From: Chrysemys picta bellii
Taxonomy: Eukaryota
Assembly (NCBI RefSeq): GCF_011386835.1
Contig: NC_088813.1
Coordinates: 12,400,001 to 12,464,000, forward strand
DNA: 64,000 bases
Reading direction: 5' to 3'
Made by a program: the position numbers and the translations under genes
Notes under the pieces: model-generated
What the model saw: the letters and a program-made list of their open reading frames with translations, nothing else
Told to the model about the DNA's origin: nothing
The model's database searches: none
In this document: positions 1 to 58,376 of the stretch, piece after piece
Position numbering within the stretch: the stretch's first letter is position 1
Layout: each line of letters opens with the position of its first letter

Positions 1-1302
1 ACTGTTGCTGACAATGGATGTCTGCAACATAATTTTCCTAGTGGAGACAAAGCTACATAGGCTAAACAACTTGCCAGAGAACAGAGAGGGAGTCTCCAAG
101 TCAGAGCCAGAATTAGAACCCAGGAGCTCTAGGCTTCCAGTTCAGGCCACGACTCTCTAGAAAGCAGAGCCCACCATGGCTTAAATGAAATTGCTTTAAA
201 TTCCCCTGAGCAGCATCAGCCGAACAGCCAAAGCTTTGGTTTACCATTGTCTTTCACTATGATCACACCCAGAATATTACATTAGGAATGATGGGTTTCC
301 ACCATAACTCTCAGCATCACTGGGGAAGGACCAGCTGTACCTTCCAGAAACAAGCTCCCTCACCAGACCTATGTTATTTGTTTCACTAACTACAGTCCAT
401 ATCTTGACATAAAAAACAGCCACACACAGAGAATAACTCATCCCAGAGGGGCAGGTATTCCCCTCGGAGTCCATTCTGAAATCCTATTGAATGTATTCCT
501 TGTTTAAGAGTCTTTTTGTAGGACGCAAGTTAGGGGCCCAGATGTCTCCAGAGCCTATTTATCTGGTTAGGGCTTGGATATGGACCCCTTAAAAATATTG
601 CAAGCATACTCAGGAGCGCTGCTACAACTTCCCCACTGCTTGGCACATACTAAACCATTTGTGCATTCAAACACATGTAGCCCACAGAAGGGTCATCCCC
701 AGCAGGACCGCCCCCACTGCGATATCCCCCAGACCCAACTCCTCTCAGTCAGTTCCTCTTCCAAAGCCCCCTTTCCTAGAGCCTTTCCTGGCCCCCTCCC
801 CATATATTCCCTATAGCTCCCCCAGAAGTCTTCTCAGGAGCTGAACCAGCCCCCTTCTCTCAATCCCTTCTCCCCACATCCCCAGCCTGGGTCCCAGGAA
901 GGTGGACCTCCATTGATCCCCTGGGGCCCTGGAATGGGACCCCAGCCCGCCTTCTACCCTCACAGCAGCCCTTAGAGGAGAGCTCAGAAACTGTCCCTCC
1001 CCCGGATCCCTGCCCCCAATGACCCTTGGAATGCCCCCCCCCCGCAACCCTCCCTCTTCTGGATCCCTGACCCCCCTTTGCCCCGTGGCCCTTGGAAGGG
1101 CCCCCCAACCCTCCCGCCCCTGGATCCTCTGACTGGCAGTGGCCCTCGGACGGCCCCTCACTCCCCTGGGTTCGCCTCAGCTCGGGGTATTCGCGGGGGG
1201 CCCGTGCCCTGCCGCCCCGACACGCGCCGGAGGGGGCCCTGGCACTCGCAGCCCCCCAGCCCGCCTCCCGCCCACACTGCCCCCTCCCGTCGGCGCCGTT
1301 AC

Positions 1303-12152: not shown

Positions 12153-12533
12153 ATTCATTCAGATTCTTGTATGTAAAATAAAGTAAATGTCTAAACAAAA
12201 AAGTCAGTTTGAAATGAAACATCAAATCTTTTCATTCTGAACATGTCTAAACAATGTTTTCAATTTTTCCCCTCAATTTTTTTCATTCAATTTTTTTTGT
12301 CAAAATCTATATGATTTTGAGGAAGAAAAATTTTTCACCAAAATGGAATTTTCGGATGGAAAATTGTTCTGACAAAAATTTCTAACCAGCTCCACCCTTT
12401 GCCTACTCCTGTAGTATAGCAATTGCTTAGCGATATGTCTTACATAGCAAGACATCTACAGTACCTCTTGCTACAGTGTCTTCTAACTTTTCCTGTCTCT
12501 GTAGATCACCATCTGACGCCAACCTCCACTGAG

Positions 12534-15500
12534 ATGGCACCCAAGAAGAAAAATCCCAAGAAGAACAAAGTGGACAAGGGCGAGGATCCCCCGGCCCATG
12601 TGATGGAGGAGGACACTTTGCTGGATATCGATCACCTCAACCACGTGAACGGTCTGTATGAAAATGTCTCCAATGGTTTCCGCTGCACTGCCACAGAGGT
12701 CAGGAACCCCAACCATGGAGGCAGCCTCCTGGAGGAGATGAGTCAAATGCAACAAAAGCAGTTCCTCTGTGACCTCACCATTGCCACCAAAACCAAGTCC
12801 TTCGATGTCCATAAGCTCGTCATGGCTTCATGCAGCGAGTATTTCCACAGCCTGCTGAAGAGAGATCCCAACTTGCCACAAGTAGAATTCAACGATGTCT
12901 CCCCTCTGGGCTTGACCACCGTTATCACTTACGCCTACACCGGTAAGCTGAATCTCTCCCTGTACACCATTGGCAGCACCATCTCAACCGCCAGCCGCCT
13001 ACAAATACATGCTTTGCTCAACATGTGCAGTGACTTCCTCATTCAGGAGATAAATGTAGAGAACTGCATGTATATCGCCAACATCTCGGAGACGTACAAC
13101 CTCAACCAGACCAAGGACGCCACTCGAAAGTTCATCCAGGAAAACTTCCTGGAGTTCTCGGAGACTGAGCAGTTCATGAAACTCACCTTTGACCAGCTGA
13201 AGGAGCTGCTGATTGATGATGGTCTGCAGATCCCAAATGAGGTCATTGCCTTCCAGATTGCCATGAAATGGCTCGAGTTTGACCCTAAGCGAGTCACATA
13301 TGCTGCCAACCTCCTGAGCAACATTAGATTTGGCACCATATCAGCTCCCGATTTGGTCAACCATGTGCAACCAGTACCACGGATGATGCAAGATCCTGAG
13401 TGCCACAGGCTGCTGGTGGAGGCTATGAATTACCATCTGCTCCCTTACCAGCAAAATACCCTTCAGTCCAGAAGAACCAAAATCCGTGGAGGCCAAAGGG
13501 TGCTAGTCACAGTTGGTGGCCGTCCAGCTTTGACCGAGAAAGCTCTTAGCAGAGAGATTAGCTACAGGGACCCGGATGGAAACTGGAACAAGATGGCTGA
13601 GATGCCAGCAAAAAGTTTCAACCAGTGTGTCATTGTGATGGATGGGTTCCTCTATGTGGCAGGAGGGGAAGATCAAAACGATGCTAGGAACCAGGCTAAG
13701 CATGCAGTCAACAGTCTGTGCAGGTAACAAGAATTTCCTCAAGGCAAGACAGTTCCCATGAGAGTGCATTTCAAGTACTCAGTTTACAAGCCTGTGGCTG
13801 CATACATACCTGCCACAATCATCAATGGGGTTTGAACCTGAGATCTCAAATGCAGGCCTCTATCACATAAGCTAAAGGAGAACTCCTTTTGCTGTGCATG
13901 AGTAGTAGGTTGTTATAATCTTTGGGCCCGGCCATTAGGGACAGATAGGATTACACGCATTAAGCAACAGCATATTCTGTCATCATTTTTTCTGAGGATA
14001 TTTTTCACAAGGGTAAATGAGCAGGAGGAAAATACAGGCTAAACCAATCAGAAATATCTATTATACACATATAGCTCCAAGAGCAGATAGAGTGAAATAC
14101 TGCTACGTTAAGGACTATCCCATCAGAGAAGCAGTGTAGACCAGCAGAGTGGGCACTGGAGTGGGTGACAAAAGACCTGAAATCTGTCCCCAGCTCTGCC
14201 ATTGATCTGCAGTGTGACTTGGCCGAGTCACATTGCCTCTGTTTTTCCTCCCACCCTTTGTCTGTCTTATCTATTTAGATTGTAAGCTCTGTGGTGCAGG
14301 GAACGTCTCTTACTATGGGTATGTACAGCTCCTAGCACAACTGGGGCCCTGATCTCAGCTGAAGCCTCCAGGCTCTACCATAATTCAAATAAATAATAAG
14401 AACATCTGTTATTTAGTCAGACAGTTAATGATACAGGTCCAGAAAGCAAGAGCAGCTTTCATGTAATTTCTCTGCCTTTTTGTGGCCCTTCAAGGTTATC
14501 TTTTCTATTCTGGCTAGAGATTGCTCAAATCTCTATATAAATTATCAGTTTCCATTCTTTAGCTGATTCCGAGTTTGGCAGAATTAGCTTAAAAAAACCC
14601 TAAATTCACCCTCTGTATAATTTCTATTGTTTGTCTTCTTTCTTTCTTCTTTGTTGCATAGCTTAAGTGGAGGGTTTGGGTTTCTGGAAAGTTCTTATGA
14701 AACATGTCATTGGACTGTGCGGGGATTATTGTTAACAGAGGAGAAATGTAACCCTGGCAACACCAAGTGGAGAATGTTGTTGAAAATCCAGACACACAGT
14801 TGGGGTTGGGCTTGCACCCAGCGATTCCGAATAAAGAACGTGGATGCTACGAAGGAAAACCAGCACAGTTAATAGCATTTTGCCTCCCAGAAATCTGTGT
14901 TCAAGTTTGCCTTCCTGACAGGAGTTTATTAGTCTCAGTCTAATCCCTCTGAGACACTGTCCCCAGATCACCAAACCATCACAGAGTTCGGACCAGTTAC
15001 TAGCCTCTGCCAGGGAGAGAATGTGAGAAAGAACCCCCTCACGGGACAGATGTCAATCGTGTCTTCATGCACTACTAGCAGGCTTTCAAATACTACAGGG
15101 ATGAGGACAGAACCACCCCTCTAGAATAGAATAGGTTTAAGGATTGGCTTGGAAGGGCTTCTTATAGGTAAAGATACAGTGCTAGAAGCTTTTGGGGCTC
15201 AGGATTGGGAGGGCAGGCTAGCCTAGGTCAGGAATACACAGGGGATACACTGCAGGGCAAGCAGCATGTTCAGAGCCTGCCTGGCCCAGGCCATTCACGA
15301 CCACTGAATTCATTCAAAAGTCAATAAAACGGGACCATGTATTTTTCCTGCAGCTGAGAAAGGCCTCAGGATTCCACCCGTCAGGTCTCCTCCTTTCTAT
15401 TTCTAGCCTGTATCTTATTCAGCATTTCTGGCATTGCCAGACTGCCCCGGGATTGCTTTCCGGGTACAGTAACAGCAATGCCATCTGCCAGCGGGGGCTC

Positions 15501-16464
15501 AGGGTCGCACGGCAGCCGTTTGCCTTGCAGCATGTGCTCAGCTTTGCGCTGCAGGGGCCCGAGGGGGATGTGATGTAGGATCTGTGGCTTGAGAGATGCA
15601 GGAAGATCAGTAACTTGTCGTTGTCAAGCAGGGGTAGACGGGAGAGATCATATGTCCCCAGGGCAGGTTCAGAGCAGCCCTCCGCAGCATGGGATCAGAG
15701 GCTAGGTGACAGCTCTTCCTTCTCTCCGCAGGTATGATGCTCGCTTCAACGCCTGGCTGCATTTGGCCAGCATGCTGCACAAGAGGACTCACTTCAGTCT
15801 GAGCGCCTACAATGGTCTCCTCTACGCCATCGGCGGGCGCAACGCCGAGGGGGTCCTGGCCTCCATCGACTGCTACATCCCTTCCACCAACAGCTGGCAG
15901 AGCAAGGCCAGCATGGAGATCCCTCGCTGCTGCCACGCCAGCACGGTCATTGACGGCAAGATCCTAGTCACCGGGGGCTACGTCAACAACTGTTACTCGC
16001 GCACCGTGTGCAGCTACGAGCCCAGCACAGACACCTGGAGAGACCGGGCTGGGCTCAGCACCCCCCGGGGCTGGCACTGCACTGCCACCTGGGCTGATCG
16101 TGCGTATGTCCTAGGGGGCAGCCAGCTGGGCCCCCGAGGTGAGCGGGTGGATGTGATCCCCGTGGAGTGCTACAATCCTGACACAGGCCAGTGGAGCTAT
16201 GTGGCGCCCGTGCCCACTGGGGTCAGCACGGCCGGGGTAACGATCCTCGACGGGCGCATCTGCCTAGTGGGAGGCTGGAATGAGAGTGGGAAGAAATACC
16301 AGAAGTGTGTGCAGAGCTACAACCCGGAGATGAACGAATGGGCAGAGGAGGAGGATCTCCCCGAGGCCACCGTGGGTGTGTCCTGCTGCACCATCACCCT
16401 CCCGCACCACGGCAGCAAGGGATCCAGGACTAGCTCAGCGGCATCGGCAGCGGTCAGCATCTAA
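12534..16464 (+). CDS. Kelch-like BTB-BACK-Kelch protein, KLHL31 paralogue (probably the fish klhl43 lineage), 640 aa; join(12534..13723,15732..16464)
   Basis: MAPKKK start, BTB ([28 protein letters not shown]), BACK, Kelch GG repeats and C-terminal SAAVSI match KLHL31 collinearly. The AG|GT..AG|G phase-2 intron gives 1923 nt in frame. An acceptor at 12504 implies an unlocated upstream non-coding exon. Confidence 0.92.
14140..14400 (+). mobile_element. MIR/CORE-type SINE in the KLHL intron
   Basis: Core CTGTGTGACTTGGCCGAGTCAC-like motif followed by an L2-like tail TTAGATTGTAAGCTC...CCTAGCACA and an A-rich end. Confidence 0.5.
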
Positions 16465-21746: not shown

Positions 21747-29614
<7,868 letters not shown>

Positions 29615-30872: not shown

Positions 30873-30878
30873 TTTATT
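30873..30878 (-). terminator. Candidate polyadenylation signal of the cGAS-like gene
   Basis: First AATAAA on the minus strand, about 365 nt after the stop codon. Confidence 0.45.
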
Positions 30879-31242
30879 TAGAGCGTAGCTAAGCTATCCA
30901 AAGCGCCCACATTGCAGGACTGCGTTACAGCACAGTTAAAACCTGGTTTAGTCTTGTAGCATAGACAGGATGGAATTGTGTTATTACCATACTCCTGAAC
31001 CCGGCTAGATCCCTGCAAAGTTCAGGTGCGTGATTCAGGCGCACAGTTTAAACACGCTTTGATCCTAGCTACGTTACAGAGTGTGTTTTTATCATGTCTG
31101 AGGAACAGCGGTGTTATAACTGGGTCCTGCAATGTGGTCGATTGTGCAGCTCCTAGGCCCCCTCCTGCCACCCTCACTAACAATTAACGTCCCAGCAGAC
31201 TCCTTCAGTCCTTACAAATGGAAAGGTAGACGCTCAGAATCT

Positions 31243-34200
31243 TTATGACCCAAAGTGGGAGAGTCCAATCGACACCAGAACCATCAGACCCACAGTGATC
31301 ATTAGAGGCCAGCTCACAGCAGCAGCCAGCAGTGGCGGGGCTGCGACCTTCTTCTTTCGGGACACAGCGGTTGACGGCTTCTTTTTTTGCTTCTCTCTTA
31401 AGCACTCCAGCAGAAACGTCAAGTTATTGGGCGGAAAGAATTTGGTGCCAAACAGGTTGCATTTGGGAATGAAAAAATGAGGCAGATGAGCGGTTGCCAC
31501 CTGCTGAATGAAATTGGCCCGGACCCTTTCGAAACAGTGAGCAACGCTGGAGGGGTTCCCATCCTGGGCCTGCTTCCATTGCAGCAGCGTGTGAAAGAAA
31601 GACGTCTCAGCATGGTAGGAACTCAAAGGAGCCAGTTCCAAGGGGTGCTCTGTCTTCAGGGCTCCCAAAAGACTTTCCAGCATCTGCAGACATTCTGGCC
31701 TAGAGAGGAGAAAGCCACATTCTTGGCATTAGCAATTTCTGTTGCTATTGGGTCAAATCCCAAGCTCCTTACCGTTTTAATTCAGGCTGTGACCTCGGTG
31801 GGAATTTTGCCTAAGTAAGGGCCTGGGGGCCACAGTGTGGTAGGCATTTGACCTACGAGAATGTAAAAAAAGGGGACAAATGCTGCTCCTACAGAGTAAG
31901 TCAACGAAGTTAAATATAGCAACATTGGATTTATGCAGGTGTAACTGAGAGCAGACTCTATCCCAAGGTCCCTGCCCTAGAGAGCTGACAATCAATGGGC
32001 CCAATCTTGCAAATGCTGACTGCCAGGCATACCGTGAGCAGTCTCATTGACAGATGGGATTACTCAGAAAAGTAAGCATTACGCTCAGTAATAGTGTTTG
32101 GAGGATTGGGCTCTAATTAATGAGGTCTGCCTGGAGAAGGGGGAGGGGGGGTAATGCAGCTGAAGCAAGTGACAGAGTATTGATTTCAGTCTAGGTCTTA
32201 TTAGCTCCCTAGTTGTTGTTTGTTGTTGTTTTTAAATCACTATTAAAGTCTCAGCTATTTTACTTTCGCTAGAAGTTGAGCATGGATCACGCCTGGCTAG
32301 CGCTAAAGGGAAATGAATATACTCAAATGCATCATCATGTTCATTAATAATACTCTATACTTCGTTTGCACCTTCCGGCTGAGGATCCCAAAGCACTTCC
32401 CACAAATCAGGATCATTGCCCCCATTTTATGGGTGTGTGTGTGTGGGGGGGGAAACTGAGGCACAGACTGGTGCTGTGACTTGCCCAAGGCCCCACAGTG
32501 AGCCAGTGGCAGAGTGAGGAATAGAATCCAGGAGTCTAGATTCCCAACCCTGTGCTCTAGACACTCAGACTCCCAGCTGATAGCAATCAATGCTTTACAT
32601 TTCCATAGCACCTTCTCTGCAAGGATCTCAAAGTGCTTAACAAAAGAGGGTCCAGGTTCAAGTCAGGGTTTCCAGGGCAAAGAAAGTAAACTATGTCCAA
32701 CAAAACATGAAGTTACAGCACTGATGCTAGTCTGGCCTGTCTCGACCCGGGCTGGGGGATACAAAGACCTCTGGCCCAGCCCTGGCTTTCCAGACTTGCA
32801 GACATACTTGGTGTGGCAGTGGTTTGCCACATGCACGTACCTGCGGCACGTGGTCGTCTGACACTTCCGGGTGCTGGTGTGGCTTTTCAAAATCTCCTTT
32901 TCCACATGAGAGAAAGACATTTTCCAGGTCTCTGAAATAACAGCAACCCCAGTGTCAGCCTACACCTCCCTCAGCTGGGCACAGAAGCCAGGCAGCAGAG
33001 GACACTGTACAGGTGATGTGGAAATCATTTGTAATGTATTTTTGATTCCAGTATTGCCTGAGAAGTCACCCCTAACTGTGAAGCTCATAAAACAGCCCCA
33101 GGCCACTGGCTCACCCTCATCCCTCTCTCGTTCCCAGGGCTTCTTCACTCTTCCCTGTGCTATCCCTCCCCAGTTCGGAGTCCCCCCTCTCCTCCCATGC
33201 CTGCCACTCTCCTGGGAACACCTCCTGCTTCCTTGTGGGGTAGCTCTAGGTCGAGGACTTGAACTGAAGGGAAAAGGGGGAGACATCATTCCCCTCAATA
33301 CATGTTATGTATGGGCTCCACCGAGGTCTCCAGAACACACAAGCCCTGTCTCAGCATGGCATACCCCACCAGAGGCTAGAGATACTCTCTGCTGACTCTC
33401 TGCAGCTTTTCTTCTGGGAGACTAGCTTAAGGCCAGTGCATTTACCACAGTGGGATACAGAGAATGTGGGGGCGGCTTTGGCAGTGCTATGAAAAGAGAG
33501 GAGGGGGCATTGGCCCTGTGGGCTGTGTGGGTTCCTTCCCCTGAGGGGGTGTTCATTGTCCCAGCTCTGCACACTACTACACCCTTCTCCAAGCCTCAGC
33601 CTGACAACTCAATCCCTAAGCACTTTCCCAGGAGAACATGCTGTGGTGAGGGAGTTACCTTTGTTATCTTGACCAGGGGCCTGTTTAGCAATGAAATAGA
33701 GGGTCTTCCTCAGATATGGCTCCTTCTCCCCCAACAACTGCTTGACATCCATCCCTTCGTCATTTGAACTGGGCCATTGGCCAGAGATCTCCAGAGCAAG
33801 GACCAGGTCAATAGACATGAATGTGTCACCTCGGTTGTCCACCATCACTAGGGGCACCGCTGGGCTGTTCTGCTTTTTCCTCTCCAGCCTCATCTGCCAT
33901 CCAGGAAAAGGCACTGAGACACCAGACAGACAGTGGACAGACCAATGGGAGAGCTTAGAAAGAGGCAGTAATTCATCAAGGGGCTTGTTTGTGTTTAGAT
34001 CAATGTCAGCCAAAGAAACCAAACCAAACAGAAACTCAACCAAATCCCTTAGGGAAGGACTCCTAGTGGGGAACCCACAGCTTTCCCCAGAAGAGGGATG
34101 TGGGGGGAGGGATAGCTCAGTGGTTTGAGCATTGGCCTACTAAACCCAGCATTGTGAGCTCAGTCCCTGAGGGGGCCACTTAGGGATCTGGGGCAAAATC

Positions 34201-36764
34201 AGTACTTGGTCCTGCTAGTGAAGGCAGAGGGCTGGACTCAATGACCTTTCAAGGTCCCTTCCAGTTCTAGGAGATGGGATATCTCCATAAATGTATTTAT
34301 TTAGATGGAGTCCAGCTCACTCAGCTCTGTGTAGTGTGAAGGATCCCAACTTCAAGGGCCTAATACCTCAGCCTTTCACCTCTGGTGACCTGGGTTCAAA
34401 TCCTACTTGAGATCACGTGAAAATGAGCTTGTGGGTCTCAGCCTAGCCCCTACCTGAGCTACGCTGCAGCTGCTGCTATTTTAAGAATGACTTAGGCCTG
34501 GACGAGCAGGAGATGTCACAGGTCAGGATGGAAGGGGTGATCTGGGTAGCTCCAGCACGGGGACACTCACCTGAGTAGAACACTTTGATGAACTGATCCA
34601 AGTGCTGCCGGAACTCCGCCATGATGCTCCCTGGGGACACAGTCTGCCCGTCCTCCAGCAGGAAGGCGGCTGGAAAGCTGCGGGACTTTCTCAGCAGAGT
34701 CAGGGTGTAGAAGAGCCCATCGTACCCCTCCACCTCAGCGTACTGAATATAATCTGGAATCGGCAGGCTCAGCAGCACGTCAAAGTTATTCGGGTGCAAG
34801 GGCTGTAGACAGAGTCTCCTACTGGAGATGCTGCTGAATTCTTTTCAGGCGAATCCCCACTTCTCCTTTCCTCCACTCATCCCCTTGATCCCATCCCTTC
34901 TCACCCCTCCTTCCTGCTTTCATTCCCTCCCTGATCCAAACTCTCTAATGACCGCCTACCTCCCCTTTTCGCTGCTGCTGTCGCCCTAGAAGGCTCTGAC
35001 TGCTCCCACCACCTACCCTCCCTCTCCTTGTTACCTGGTAGCTGCTCCCCGACGTCAGTTCTCTCACATCCCTGAAGTAGGGTCTCTCGGGACACTCATT
35101 CAGGTAGCTAAAGAACTGTCGGAAGAAGGCATGGAGAAGATCGACTGCGTTGGCCCCATCCAGCTGTTTCAGGCGGAGGGACTTTGCCCTCTCTTTAATC
35201 CGGGTGAGGTTGTCTTTCTTCCAGTCTTGAAAGGTTCGCATTGCAGCTGAGGTCCCTGGTTTCTCACTCAGATCAGCGGAGGCATCTTGGGAATAGACCT
35301 GCCCCAGGTCTCCTAAAGGGAAACATTAGAGATGAGAGATCCCTGGCACTTCAGCCAGCTTCCTCCATATCAAACCATGCTGCTACTGCTTCTCCAATGC
35401 AAGTTTAGGTCCCGATCCTTCTTCCCTTGCTAAACTCCAATAGGGGGAGGAGCTGGGCCTCGTTTTGTGCAGCATCAGTCTTACAAACTGTCGTAAACGA
35501 TTTTGGCGGAAAGAGAAATTAAGGAGTGAAAGAGAAAGGAGACTTGAAATGTGATGGAGGAGTTGGAGACGTGGGGAAGCAGTTCCAGACAGCGGGTAAT
35601 GCAGAGGAGAACGCTCCCATGCAGTCAGTGGGAAGATTGCGAAAAGGAACAGCGGGAGTTGGCTGAGCAGAGGGAGCGGGAAAGAGGAGTAAAACGAGAT
35701 CAGATCTGTGAGGTCAGCTGGAGTAAACAGTGTCAGAGATGCCTTTATCTCAGTCTAAGGGAAGGCTGATGTGTGTGTTTTGTACTGCGAGATGCTGCAC
35801 CTCTGTTAATTCAGACCAATCATAAAAGAAGCCATGCTGGCATGGCTGATATCCACCTTCATTGCGGCTGCAGTGCCTAGCGTACTTACAGGACACTGCT
35901 AATGACAAGGAGAAGGTCCATGGTTTTGAGGTAATAGGATACTCTCCTCCCATAGTGCTGGATTCATCAGGAATTTAGGGATTACCGTATTATGGGGGTG
36001 GGGGACATCTAACCCAGTACCCTGTCTCTGACAGTAGATACTTCCAAAAAAGCATCACTCCATTCCCACCTACCGTAGACTCAGCTATTGTGCAGTATTT
36101 TACCACAGAAGGTAATTTCCTCCTGACCTCAGCCAGTGAGCAGTTTATACCCTGAAGCCTGAGGATCATTGGCCTGGAAAACTTTTAGCTGAATTAGTGT
36201 AAGTGCAGGTGCTATTCTTAATCAGCCAAATGCTTGCACTTTTAAAAGTCCAATTTGGGGTCCCACAGCCGACTCACCCACCCAACTCCCTCGAATCCCA
36301 AAGAGTGGGGAGAGGGGAGGACAATAACCCGTGTCATCTAGCTACCCCACCACATGCTGTGAGATCATCAAACTGAAAAACAGTGAAGCCTGGAGCATTT
36401 CTGAATGGCCATTTACAACCAGTGAAGGTCCAATAGAGATTCCCTGACCTGCAGCTTCCCTGTGGAGCTTGTCCAACTCCACCTTCCACCGGCTCTGGGT
36501 GCCAAGGCTCCGGAGCTGCTGGGAGGTCTCCGGAGGATGGGAGCCTAAACTGTCTAGGTTCCACTGCTTCCTTGCCCTGAGGTTTGAAGATTCGGCTGCT
36601 TCCAATGGGGACAGGGCTCGCTGGCTGGCTGTTCCCTCTGTGTCTCCTGGCTCTTTGCTTCTGCCGGCTCTGCCCTTCCTCTGAAGACCCTTCCATACCC
36701 TACGGTTCTTGGCCGGCGTAACATTGAGGGGCGGAGAGCTTGCACTTAGAGTCGGACCTGCCAT
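31243..36764 (-). CDS. Cyclic GMP-AMP synthase-like (cGAS/Mab-21 family) paralogue with C-terminal hydrophobic tail, 542 aa; complement join(36449..36764,35035..35312,34571..34802,33659..33913,32841..32931,31243..31699)
   Basis: Exons of 316/278/232/255/91/457 nt, all GT-AG with compatible phases 1,0,1,1,2, give 1629 nt with no internal stop. Motifs GSSYQ|PLHPNNFDV, SPAVPL, SIDLVLALE..QWPSS..EG, YFIAK, ETWKMSFSHVEKEIL, SSYHAETSFFH and HFFIPKCNLF match human cGAS in order. Exon 1 is inferred from phase match and Kozak context and is less certain than exons 2-6. Confidence 0.88.
34105..34301 (+). mobile_element. Tortoise polIII/SINE (tRNA-derived head, CR1-like tail)
   Basis: GGGATAGCTCAGTGGTTTGAGCATTGGCC A-box head; tail GGACTCAATGACCTTTCAAGGTCCCTTCCAGTTCTA; AT-rich end. 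Confidence 0.85.
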
Positions 36765-36909
36765 CTTGCATTTGGACCCTATGAGATTCAAAGAGAATCC
36801 AGGTGTTTATTGTGATTCCAGGTTTCTTTTCTGATCTCCGCCTCAGCCACCTCTGTGTCAGGAGAGAGGGATGCTGCCCTTAGTCATAAAAAAAATAATA
36901 ATGCAGGGC

Positions 36910-40953: not shown

Positions 40954-46493
<5,540 letters not shown>

Positions 46494-54479: not shown

Positions 54480-58376
<3,897 letters not shown>

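What the first reader, a model, noticed from the sequence alone, without database searches (positions are those of the whole stretch)
31243..31398. Tail-anchor-like C-terminus on the cGAS paralogue
Where human cGAS ends, this protein continues REKQKKKPSTAVSRKKK-VAAPP-LLAAAVSWPLMITVGLMVLVSIGL-SHFGS*. That is a polybasic patch, about 24 uncharged hydrophobic residues (514-537) and a 5-residue neutral tail, the classic tail-anchored topology with the NTase fold in the cytosol. The lack of basic residues after the helix favours ER targeting, where STING resides (inference). Canonical cGAS has no TM segment, and the human Mab-21-fold proteins I recall with one (MiD49/51, ITPRIP family) carry it at the N-terminus.
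Basis: partly seen in the sequence, partly recalled or inferred. Interest (0 to 1): 0.85.

Follow-up and report, generated by a model that had tools for sequence, protein, structure and literature searches.

The report
Tail-anchored cGAS paralogue in a turtle
The hydrophobic C-terminus is real, transcribed and conserved: it is the membrane anchor of an old vertebrate cGAS paralogue (the fish "cGASL/cGASb" lineage), which carries such a tail from sharks to platypus, so this is a reptile member of a known gene family, not a one-off.

Summary
Window 31398-31243 (minus strand) encodes R492-S542 plus the stop of a six-exon, 542-aa Mab-21/cGAS-like gene. It holds a polybasic stretch, an uncharged hydrophobic run at 514-537, and the end SHFGS.

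Spliced transcript contigs from three runs in three studies and two coded species labels use all five predicted introns and read through the tail.

The tail is not a species-specific read-on. Turtle orthologues (Trachemys, Mauremys, Caretta, Pelodiscus) end in the same SWPLMITVGLMVLVSIGLSHF core. Lizards and a python share the motif WPLMITxGLxxLVSxxL.

The wider paralogue clade separates from canonical cGAS with 100/100 support and includes grass carp cGASL. Nearly all its members carry a hydrophobic segment of about 21 residues within 0-10 residues of the C-terminus, and almost none has another such segment.

An AlphaFold model of the Pelodiscus orthologue shows the Mab-21 core, a disordered linker, then a terminal helix.

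Best reading: a tail anchor that holds the NTase fold on the cytosolic face of an endomembrane. ER is the likeliest membrane, but that is inference.

The scan noted this only on this same window, not on other DNA.

I found no open paper that describes the anchor. Verdict: new member of a known kind, moderately interesting.

The parts
31243..31245 (-). Stop codon TAA
   Evidence: The position is shared by the turtle orthologues.
31246..31260 (-). C-terminal extension SHFGS (538-542), neutral. G541R occurs in some transcripts and in Trachemys.
31261..31332 (-).
   Evidence: Kyte-Doolittle 19-residue maximum 2.17, against 0.87 elsewhere in the protein.
31252..31314 (-). Conserved transmembrane core, about 520-540 (SWPLMITVGLMVLVSIGLSHF)
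   Evidence: Identical in Mauremys, Trachemys and Caretta, and near-identical in Pelodiscus. Lizards and a python share the motif. Residues 520-537 (31261-31314) show 0 differences in 54 nt against Caretta. Pelodiscus residues 526-546 are predicted as a helix, which corresponds to window 521-541.
31333..31398 (-). Polybasic juxtamembrane linker 492-513 (REKQKKKPSTAVSRKKKVAAPP). 9 basic and 1 acidic residue in its first 17.
   Evidence: The equivalent stretch is disordered in the orthologue model. It evolves fast against Caretta, with dN 0.12 above dS 0.05.
31399..31699 (-). Rest of the last exon: Mab-21 C-terminal (HhH/H2TH-like) domain
   Evidence: Pfam PF20266, E 3.5e-13. Best solved match is mouse cGAS, E 7.5e-14.
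32841..32931 (-). Exon 5 (remnant of the zinc thumb)
   Evidence: Model. Both joints are present in spliced contigs.
33659..33913 (-). Exon 4 (NTase core, holds the SIDLV aspartate)
34571..34802 (-). Exon 3 (holds NNFDV, where the family has [DE]FD)
35035..35312 (-). Exon 2 (start of the Mab-21 fold, GS motif)
36449..36764 (-). Coding part of exon 1, ATG at 36764-36762. The exon itself starts at about 36779, downstream of a non-coding 5' exon.
   Evidence: Contigs reach 36779 and then run on with unlike sequence (tables 7 and 8).
30873..30878 (-). First AATAAA after the stop (candidate poly(A) signal)
   Evidence: Transcript contigs cover the 3'UTR down to at least 31000.

Best explanation
The last 51 codons encode a tail-anchor module belonging to a turtle orthologue of the vertebrate cGAS paralogue known in fish as cGASL/cGASb. 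I call the turtle copy cGASL1.

Proposed mechanism:
- The single hydrophobic helix (about 520-541) leaves the ribosome only after termination. It is therefore inserted post-translationally. This step is inferred.
- The polybasic linker stays on the cytosolic side, following the positive-inside rule. The Mab-21 nucleotidyltransferase fold is then held on a roughly 20-residue flexible tether at the cytosolic face of an endomembrane.
- The short neutral end after the helix makes the ER the likeliest membrane. This is inference; I give it about 0.5-0.6 if the anchor is real.
- Tethering would place the protein beside membrane-resident signalling adaptors. Fish cGASL/cGASb is reported to bind STING (MITA) and to act on MAVS.
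- In this species the first catalytic acidic residue is Asn (N204). The tethered protein may therefore act as a binder or regulator rather than as a cyclase. This is also inferred.
For: Sequence: hydrophobic maximum 2.17 at the extreme C-terminus, with no other candidate segment. Charge is +8 before the run and 0 after it.

Expression: spliced contigs in runs X2, X3 and X7 carry all five joints at the modelled introns and run through the tail and the stop. The only indels are in the 3'UTR. The only change inside the hydrophobic run is V519M, and no variant was listed in the 520-540 core.

Orthologues: Trachemys is 95.8% identical, Mauremys 92%, Caretta 90% and Pelodiscus 80%. All keep the tail. 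The motif is shared with lizards and a python. The Caretta locus has the same order, eEF1A - gene - RPL11.

Selection: 0 of 54 nt differ in the core against Caretta, while the 3'UTR is 87% identical and the linker has 8 differences in 84 nt.

Family:
- The paralogue clade, including grass carp cGASL, splits from canonical cGAS with 100/100 support.
- 109 of 112 further clade proteins from the fish-profile search (teleosts, sturgeons, one shark) have a C-terminal hydrophobic segment.
- In 126 members the median uncharged segment is 21 aa and the median extension after it is 1 aa. The net charge of that extension is 0 in 71 and +1 in 43. Only 2 have another hydrophobic segment.

Structure: in the AF2 model of the Pelodiscus orthologue the core spans 127-504, residues 507-527 are disordered, and 526-546 form a helix with pLDDT about 76-84.

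Against: - No experiment or dedicated TM predictor was available. Kyte-Doolittle scores and AF2 are indirect.
- The conserved core is only moderately hydrophobic, with Pro, two Gly, two Ser and one Thr. A simple sum on the Hessa scale is about +0.5 to +1.2 kcal/mol.
- The anchor is dispensable in some lineages. Colubroid snakes lost it. The second turtle paralogue ends at a stop before it.
- ER versus mitochondrial or other targeting is undecided. The G541R variant adds a basic residue after the helix.
- The functional link to STING is taken from fish papers cited second-hand, not from reptiles.
Confidence: 0.82

Rival explanations
1. The tail is a membrane anchor, but it targets the mitochondrial outer membrane, MAM or peroxisomes rather than the bulk ER. 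The Mab-21 domain would then sit next to MAVS rather than STING.
For: - The core is moderately hydrophobic: GRAVY 1.9-2.2 in turtles and 1.7-2.3 in squamates.
- The upstream flank is strongly basic.
- G541R adds a basic residue after the helix in some animals and in Trachemys.
- 43 of 126 family members have a +1 extension after the helix.
- A paper on grass carp cGASL driving autophagic degradation of MAVS appears in the reference list of PMC9945316. I know it by title only.
Against: - The extension after the helix is neutral in the window, Mauremys, Caretta, Pelodiscus and all the lizards.
- From general knowledge, mitochondrial and peroxisomal tail anchors usually need basic residues after the helix.
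- Fish and crocodile members are much more hydrophobic, 2.5-3.3, which is ER-like.
Confidence: 0.2
2. The hydrophobic C-terminus is not inserted in a membrane. It acts as a soluble hydrophobic element, such as a degron, an oligomerisation helix, or an autoinhibitory helix that packs on the Mab-21 domain.
For: - Hydrophobicity is borderline on the Hessa scale.
- The helix N-terminus carries Pro and Trp.
- Several lineages lost the segment without losing the gene.
Against: - Across the clade the sequence of the segment is unrelated (turtle, crocodile, platypus, shark, teleost). Its length, its hydrophobicity, its position 0-10 residues from the end and its lack of charge are kept. That is the pattern of a lipid-facing helix, not of a protein-protein interface.
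- AF2 places it away from the core, behind a disordered linker.
Confidence: 0.06
3. The tail is a lineage-specific read-on or an annotation artefact with no function.
For: About 0.5-5% of random ORF tails in this window are equally hydrophobic.
Against: - It is conserved in sequence across turtles and squamates, and in kind across jawed vertebrates.
- It is present in spliced transcripts.
- There are no nucleotide differences in the core against Caretta, despite 13% divergence in the 3'UTR.
Confidence: 0.01
4. The hydrophobic end is a GPI-attachment signal or a signal-anchor for a secretory-pathway topology, with the Mab-21 domain in the lumen.
For: GPI signals are also C-terminal hydrophobic stretches.
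Against: - There is no N-terminal signal peptide or other hydrophobic segment. The N-terminal 126 residues are polar and disordered.
- A strongly basic flank lies directly upstream of the hydrophobic run.
- All related NTase folds are cytosolic.
Confidence: 0.01

Closest known systems
Fish cGASL / cGASb (grass carp cGAS-like protein, P0213; zebrafish and grass carp cGASb)
   Same: Same paralogue clade, split from canonical cGAS with 100/100 support. Same architecture: disordered N-terminus, Mab-21 core, linker, C-terminal hydrophobic segment. P0213 ends ...YAWLVVVIVCVGIGCVFV.
   Different: - The tail sequences are unrelated.
- The fish tails are more hydrophobic (2.6-2.9 against 2.2) and follow a Pro-rich acidic or neutral linker, not a polybasic one.
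- Fish keep the E-F-D catalytic motif, whereas the window has N-F-D.
- Function has been studied only in fish.
NCBI 'cyclic GMP-AMP synthase-like' models of turtles and squamates (Trachemys P0236, Mauremys P0235, Pelodiscus P0102, Anolis P0001)
   Same: Direct orthologues, 48-96% identical, with the same tail motif. The synteny is the same in Caretta, the one orthologue locus fetched.
   Different: These are automatic predictions without described function. The Trachemys model uses a donor 18 nt further on, which adds VTRRGR. The transcript contigs here do not support that donor.
Canonical cGAS (human, mouse)
   Same: Mab-21 NTase fold and Mab-21_C domain. The last exon matches mouse cGAS at E 7.5e-14. 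Both genes sit beside an eEF1A gene; for human CGAS-EEF1A1 this is from my own knowledge.
   Different: Canonical cGAS is soluble and ends in ...ERNNGFPxF with no hydrophobic tail; 46 of 48 cGAS-side representatives lack one. It has an intact E-D-D triad and a full zinc thumb.
MiD49/MiD51 and the ITPRIP family (Mab-21-fold proteins with an N-terminal membrane anchor; from general knowledge)
   Same: A Mab-21 fold tethered to an organelle membrane and facing the cytosol. In MiD49/51 the fold is catalytically inactive.
   Different: Their anchor is N-terminal and inserted differently. They belong to a different branch of the Mab-21 family.
Tail-anchored or lipid-anchored components of nucleic-acid sensing: MAVS, TREX1, prenylated OAS1 p46 (from general knowledge)
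   Same: A cytosolic domain held on an endomembrane by a C-terminal anchor. OAS1 p46 is a related NTase-fold sensor whose membrane targeting changes what it detects.
   Different: These are unrelated proteins or anchor chemistries. The MAVS and TREX1 tails are not homologous to this one.

Membership tests
Tail-anchored (type IV) membrane proteins | A single hydrophobic transmembrane segment within about 30-40 residues of the C-terminus | tested here: met
   The run at 514-537 and the core at 520-541 end 1-5 residues from the C-terminus. Kyte-Doolittle 19-residue mean 2.17. A helix is predicted in the 80%-identical orthologue.
Tail-anchored (type IV) membrane proteins | No N-terminal signal sequence and no other transmembrane segment | tested here: met
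   The next best 19-residue window scores 0.87. The N-terminus is polar and disordered. 124 of 126 relatives have no second segment.
Tail-anchored (type IV) membrane proteins | Charge distribution compatible with an N-terminus in the cytosol | tested here: met
   Net +8 in the 15 residues before the hydrophobic run and 0 after it.
Tail-anchored (type IV) membrane proteins | Post-translational insertion (GET/TRC40, EMC or spontaneous) and integral membrane association | not testable with these tools
   Needs cell fractionation, carbonate extraction and GET/EMC knock-outs.
Vertebrate cGASL/cGASb paralogue clade | Phylogenetic placement with fish cGASL, apart from canonical cGAS | tested here: met
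   In the careful IQ-TREE run, with tails largely trimmed (the trim missed platypus and over-cut four rows), 23 paralogue rows including grass carp cGASL separate from 22 others at 100/100. The quick tree of 81 rows gave 97.
Vertebrate cGASL/cGASb paralogue clade | Co-existence with a canonical cGAS in the same lineage (true paralogy) | tested here: met
   Gymnothorax javanicus has both (P0028 and P0198). Among turtles, Carettochelys has a canonical cGAS (P0027) as well as cGAS-like genes. The window's own genome could not be searched.
Vertebrate cGASL/cGASb paralogue clade | Binds STING/MITA and modulates interferon induction | not testable with these tools
   Reported for fish only, and read second-hand (PMC9945316, PMC11264591).
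cGAS-like receptors (active cGLR enzymes) | Mab-21 NTase and Mab-21_C domains | tested here: met
   PF03281 and PF20266. Matches to solved cGAS structures.
cGAS-like receptors (active cGLR enzymes) | Complete active-site motif h[QT]GS ... [DE]h[DE]h ... h[DE]h (as defined in PMC9980059) | tested here: not met
   GS is present and the third Asp is present (SIDLV). The first acidic residue is Asn, giving NNFDV. Mauremys and Pelodiscus have NEFDV and Caretta has NGFDV. So I do not file this as an active cGLR.
GPI-anchored proteins | N-terminal signal peptide together with a C-terminal hydrophobic signal | tested here: not met
   No N-terminal hydrophobic segment.

The most novel reading that the evidence does not exclude
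The tail anchor may be the defining, ancestral feature of a second, membrane-resident cGAS lineage. That lineage arose with the eEF1A-linked duplication at the base of jawed vertebrates. It persists in sharks, ray-finned fishes, amphibian-grade lineages, reptiles and monotremes. No therian or bird member turned up in any search here, so it was probably lost in those groups. It has not been described as a membrane protein. If so, most vertebrates would run a tethered cGAS-like sensor or regulator at the same membrane system as STING, and lineages that shed the anchor (colubroid snakes, turtle cGASL2) would be natural experiments.
Probability: 0.35. Interest if true: 0.7.

Novelty: new member of a known kind. 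Interest (0 to 1): 0.5.

Why it matters
Work on cGAS-STING is dominated by mammals, where cGAS is soluble and is regulated by nuclear and plasma-membrane tethering. A conserved, tail-anchored paralogue would show a different arrangement in most other vertebrates: a cGAS-fold protein held permanently on an endomembrane, within reach of STING or MAVS.

It also explains in structural terms why fish cGASL/cGASb is reported to associate with STING.

It gives a simple, testable handle. Deleting or swapping the tail would separate localisation from catalysis.

For genome annotation, it shows that the reptile "cGAS-like" models are real, expressed genes, and that the hydrophobic C-terminus should be annotated as a transmembrane anchor.

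Tried and rejected
- Species-specific stop loss: rejected. Orthologues keep the tail.
- Chance hydrophobicity: 3 of 553 random ORF tails in the window match it, so the score alone is weak evidence. I rely on conservation instead.
- GPI signal or secretory topology: rejected for lack of any N-terminal signal.
- Alternative splicing that removes the tail: none seen in the contigs of four runs. Contigs cannot exclude rare isoforms.
- Pelodiscus DNA for a codon comparison: two look-ups found no record. Caretta was used instead. With only 54 nt in the core, the dN/dS contrast has low power.
- The idea that the hard-shell turtle cGAS-like proteins of 586-588 aa are orthologues whose tail exon was missed: rejected. 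The Chrysemys locus has an in-frame stop right after ...AAHEE, with a decayed remnant of the crocodile tail behind it. It also lies in a different genomic context.
- Literature: eight full-text searches and several papers gave no description of a transmembrane anchor on cGASL/cGASb or on a reptile cGAS paralogue. The primary fish papers (Ge 2015, Zhou 2019 and 2021, Liu 2020, Xu 2021) are not in the library. Prior description therefore cannot be excluded.
- DeepTMHMM, Phobius and the full delta-G predictor were not available.
- No complex prediction with STING was run, because no STING of this genome was in hand.
Full report
**1. What is at the coordinates**

The window is vertebrate DNA. On the minus strand an ORF ends with TAA at 31245-31243. 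I traced reading frames and splice signals by hand and assembled six coding exons:
- 36764-36449
- 35312-35035
- 34802-34571
- 33913-33659
- 32931-32841
- 31699-31243

Every intron is GT..AG.

The finding's span, 31398-31243, is exactly R492 to S542 plus the stop. It reads REKQKKKPSTAVSRKKK / VAAPP / LLAAAVSWPLMITVGLMVLVSIGL / SHFGS.

Pfam finds Mab-21_C in the last exon (E 3.5e-13) and the Mab-21 nucleotidyltransferase domain in exon 4. The best solved relatives of the last exon are mouse and human cGAS (E 7.5e-14). The alignment stops at residue 98-100 of that exon, which is protein residue 489-491 and about 16 residues short of the end of the mouse chain.

The best Kyte-Doolittle 19-residue mean in the whole protein is 2.17, at residue 515. 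The next best outside the tail is 0.87. A plain sum on the Hessa scale is about +0.5 to +1.2 kcal/mol, which is moderately hydrophobic.

Among 553 random ORF tails from the six frames of this window, 3 reach 2.17 and 27 reach 1.6. Hydrophobicity alone would therefore be weak evidence.

**2. The gene is expressed and the tail is in the mRNA**

Small runs of two coded species labels hold the stretch. I laid four of them on 31000-36900. They gave contigs with joints at 31698/32840, 32931/33659, 33913/34571, 34802/35035 and 35311/36448. All read CT..AC on the plus strand, which is GT..AG on the gene's strand, and all match my five introns.
- Single contigs of 1732 nt (X3) and 1652 nt (X7) run from exon 1 through the tail.
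- X2 shows four of the joints on two contigs.
- X1 gave an unspliced piece only.

So three runs from three studies show the spliced form.

No insertion or deletion lies in the coding sequence. The only ones are in the 3'UTR, at 31206 and 31220.

Variants in the tail are V519M, G541R, A502T, T501A and P499Q. The one change inside the hydrophobic run keeps it hydrophobic.

The contigs run on past 36779 with unlike sequence, which points to a non-coding 5' exon. The first AATAAA after the stop is at 30878.

**3. The tail is conserved in orthologues**

I searched 1.84 billion cluster representatives with the last exon. The best hit (Anolis, 528 aa) aligned over residues 2-149 of 151, that is, through the tail.

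Names came from cluster look-ups and two word-indexed searches. Identity to the window protein:

| Species | Protein | Identity |
|---|---|---|
| Trachemys scripta | P0236 | 95.8% |
| Mauremys reevesii | P0235 | 92% |
| Caretta caretta | P0237 | 90% |
| Pelodiscus sinensis | P0102 | 80% |
| Lizards and a python | several | about 47-51% |

. The window is therefore a turtle close to Trachemys.

All four turtle orthologues end in SWPLMITVGLM(V/I)LV(S/L)IGLSHF(G/R)(S/T). Anolis, Sceloporus, Phrynosoma, Rhineura, Zootoca and Podarcis end in ...TVSRKR...PDM(T/A)WPLM(I/V/T)T(L/F)GL..L(V/F)S..LP...., and the python Liasis in a more divergent form of the same motif...MTWPHMIPLGLLGLLSVVLPNTAV.

Mauremys and Caretta have LLDADM, and Pelodiscus LLNSDM, where the window has LLAAAV. 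The conserved core therefore starts at about S520/W521.

The Caretta locus has the same gene order as the window: eEF1A, this gene, then RPL11 (window RPL11 pieces).

Codon by codon against Caretta:

| Region | Differences |
|---|---|
| Core, residues 520-537 | 0 of 54 nt |
| Linker, residues 492-519 | 8 of 84 nt (dN 0.12, dS 0.05) |
| Mab-21_C part of the exon | 16 of 300 nt |
| First 200 nt of the 3'UTR | 87% identical |

At the UTR rate about seven differences would be expected in the core.

**4. The tail is the hallmark of a whole paralogue lineage**

In a quick tree of 81 representatives, 16 of the 18 proteins with a hydrophobic C-terminus fell in one clade of 30 (support 97). The cGAS side of the tree had 2 of 48.

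A careful tree, with tails largely trimmed (the trim missed the platypus row and over-cut four others), split 23 paralogue rows from 22 others with 100/100 support. Inside the paralogue clade the order follows the species tree: sharks first, then lungfish, ray-finned fishes and tetrapods. The UniProt entry named "Cyclic GMP-AMP synthase-like protein" of grass carp (P0213) nests among the teleosts.

The other side of the tree holds canonical cGAS of mammals, a bird, a turtle (Carettochelys), lizards and teleosts. One moray species appears on both sides. This is true paralogy.

Of 112 further clade proteins found with a fish profile (teleosts, sturgeons, one shark), 109 have a C-terminal segment scoring at least 1.6. 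Grass carp cGASL is among them, ending ...YAWLVVVIVCVGIGCVFV.

Over 126 tail-bearing members:
- The uncharged segment has a median length of 21 residues.
- A median of 1 residue follows it (range 0-10).
- The net charge of that extension is 0 in 71 proteins and +1 in 43.
- Only 2 proteins have any other hydrophobic segment.

The tail sequences of turtle, crocodile, platypus, shark and teleost are unrelated to one another. What is conserved is position, length and hydrophobicity. That is what a lipid-embedded helix predicts and a protein-binding helix does not.

**5. Structure**

I ran AlphaFold2 on the Pelodiscus orthologue with a 59-sequence family alignment. The result:

| Residues | Prediction |
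|---|---|
| 1-126 | disordered |
| 127-504 | confident Mab-21 fold |
| 507-527 | pLDDT below 50 |
| 526-546 | helix, block pLDDT 84 and 76 |

Shifted by the five-residue offset, the helix is 521-541 in the window protein. It is separated from the domain by the basic linker.

**6. How it most likely works**

Shown here:
- A single C-terminal hydrophobic helix.
- No signal peptide.
- Strong positive charge on the N-terminal side only.
- Transcription of the tail.
- Purifying conservation of the core.
- Family-wide retention of the feature.

Inferred:
- The helix emerges from the ribosome only at termination. Insertion must therefore be post-translational, by a tail-anchor route, with the Mab-21 domain in the cytosol.
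- The short neutral end favours the ER under the usual targeting rules.
- The moderate hydrophobicity of the turtle and lizard core, and the G541R variant, keep mitochondrial or MAM targeting open. I give that rival 0.2.

[quoted passage not shown] A paper on cGASL-driven autophagic degradation of MAVS is listed in PMC9945316's references (PMC9945316, PMC11264591). An anchor in the same membrane system would explain such contacts.

In the window and in Trachemys the first catalytic acidic residue is Asn (NNFDV). Mauremys and Pelodiscus keep Glu, and Caretta has Gly. In this species the tethered protein may therefore work without cyclase activity.

**7. Comparison with what is known, and novelty**

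- The gene is a reptile member of the cGASL/cGASb lineage. Close relatives are already in NCBI as "cyclic GMP-AMP synthase-like".
- It meets the sequence-level definition of a tail-anchored protein.
- It does not meet the active-site definition of an active cGLR.
- Its anchor sits at the opposite end from those of MiD49/51 and ITPRIP (my own knowledge).
- Eight literature searches found no open paper that describes the anchor. The primary fish papers are not held, so I cannot say it is undescribed.
- The earlier notes of this scan on the same gene come from this same window. Nothing was found on other DNA.

Noticed in passing
window 34787-34789 (codon N204, exon 3): The first catalytic acidic residue of the NTase motif is Asn (NNFDV) in the window and in Trachemys. 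It is Glu in Mauremys and Pelodiscus and Gly in Caretta. The active site is therefore decaying independently within turtles.
   Followed up: partly
L001:20642-20700 (Chrysemys picta, second cGAS-like gene): Hard-shell turtles carry a second paralogue of 586-588 aa. It ends at an in-frame stop right after ...GLQAFAAHEE, and a decayed remnant of the crocodile TM tail follows the stop. It lies at a different locus, with no RPL11 or eEF1A within 10 kb and only exon-level similarity of 67-81% to the window.
   Followed up: yes
P0097, P0101, P0103 (Crotalus, Pantherophis, Erythrolamprus): Colubroid snakes have lost the hydrophobic core; their proteins end ...TWPHWAALSCSP. The python Liasis keeps it. 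This is a natural loss of the anchor.
   Followed up: partly
window 31249-31251 (codon 541): G541R is seen in the contig of run X2 (coded organism A) and in one of two contigs of run X3 (organism B), and is the state in the Trachemys protein. It puts a basic residue after the helix and could shift targeting.
   Followed up: partly
window 35017-35034: The NCBI Trachemys model reads 18 nt into the intron after exon 2, adding VTRRGR. All spliced contigs here use the donor at 35035 instead.
   Followed up: yes
window 36779 and upstream: Transcript contigs stop matching at 36779 and continue for up to 97 nt of other sequence. This implies a non-coding 5' exon upstream of the window's exon 1 (tables 7 and 8).
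   Followed up: no
window 34100-34290: An intronic repeat with a tRNA-like end has enormous summed depth in all four runs (tens of thousands), with many loose ends. It looks like an abundant SINE-type element.
   Followed up: no
window 27238-28500 (-), 41900-45800 (-), 54900-57100 (+), 12420-16461 (+): The neighbours are an RPL11 gene just downstream, two eEF1A-like genes upstream, and a BTB/kelch gene. Caretta shows the same eEF1A - cGAS-like - RPL11 order. Human CGAS also lies near EEF1A1 (my own knowledge). That fits a paired duplication of cGAS and eEF1A.
   Followed up: partly
window 28923-29123 (-): A tandem repeat encodes PSPALVK / NPHLLWL units in two frames, in a GC-rich stretch near the 5' end of the RPL11 gene.
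   Followed up: no
P0064 (Leptobrachium leishanense): One frog protein on the canonical-cGAS side of the tree also ends in a hydrophobic segment. This may be an independent gain, or a misplacement in the tree.
   Followed up: no
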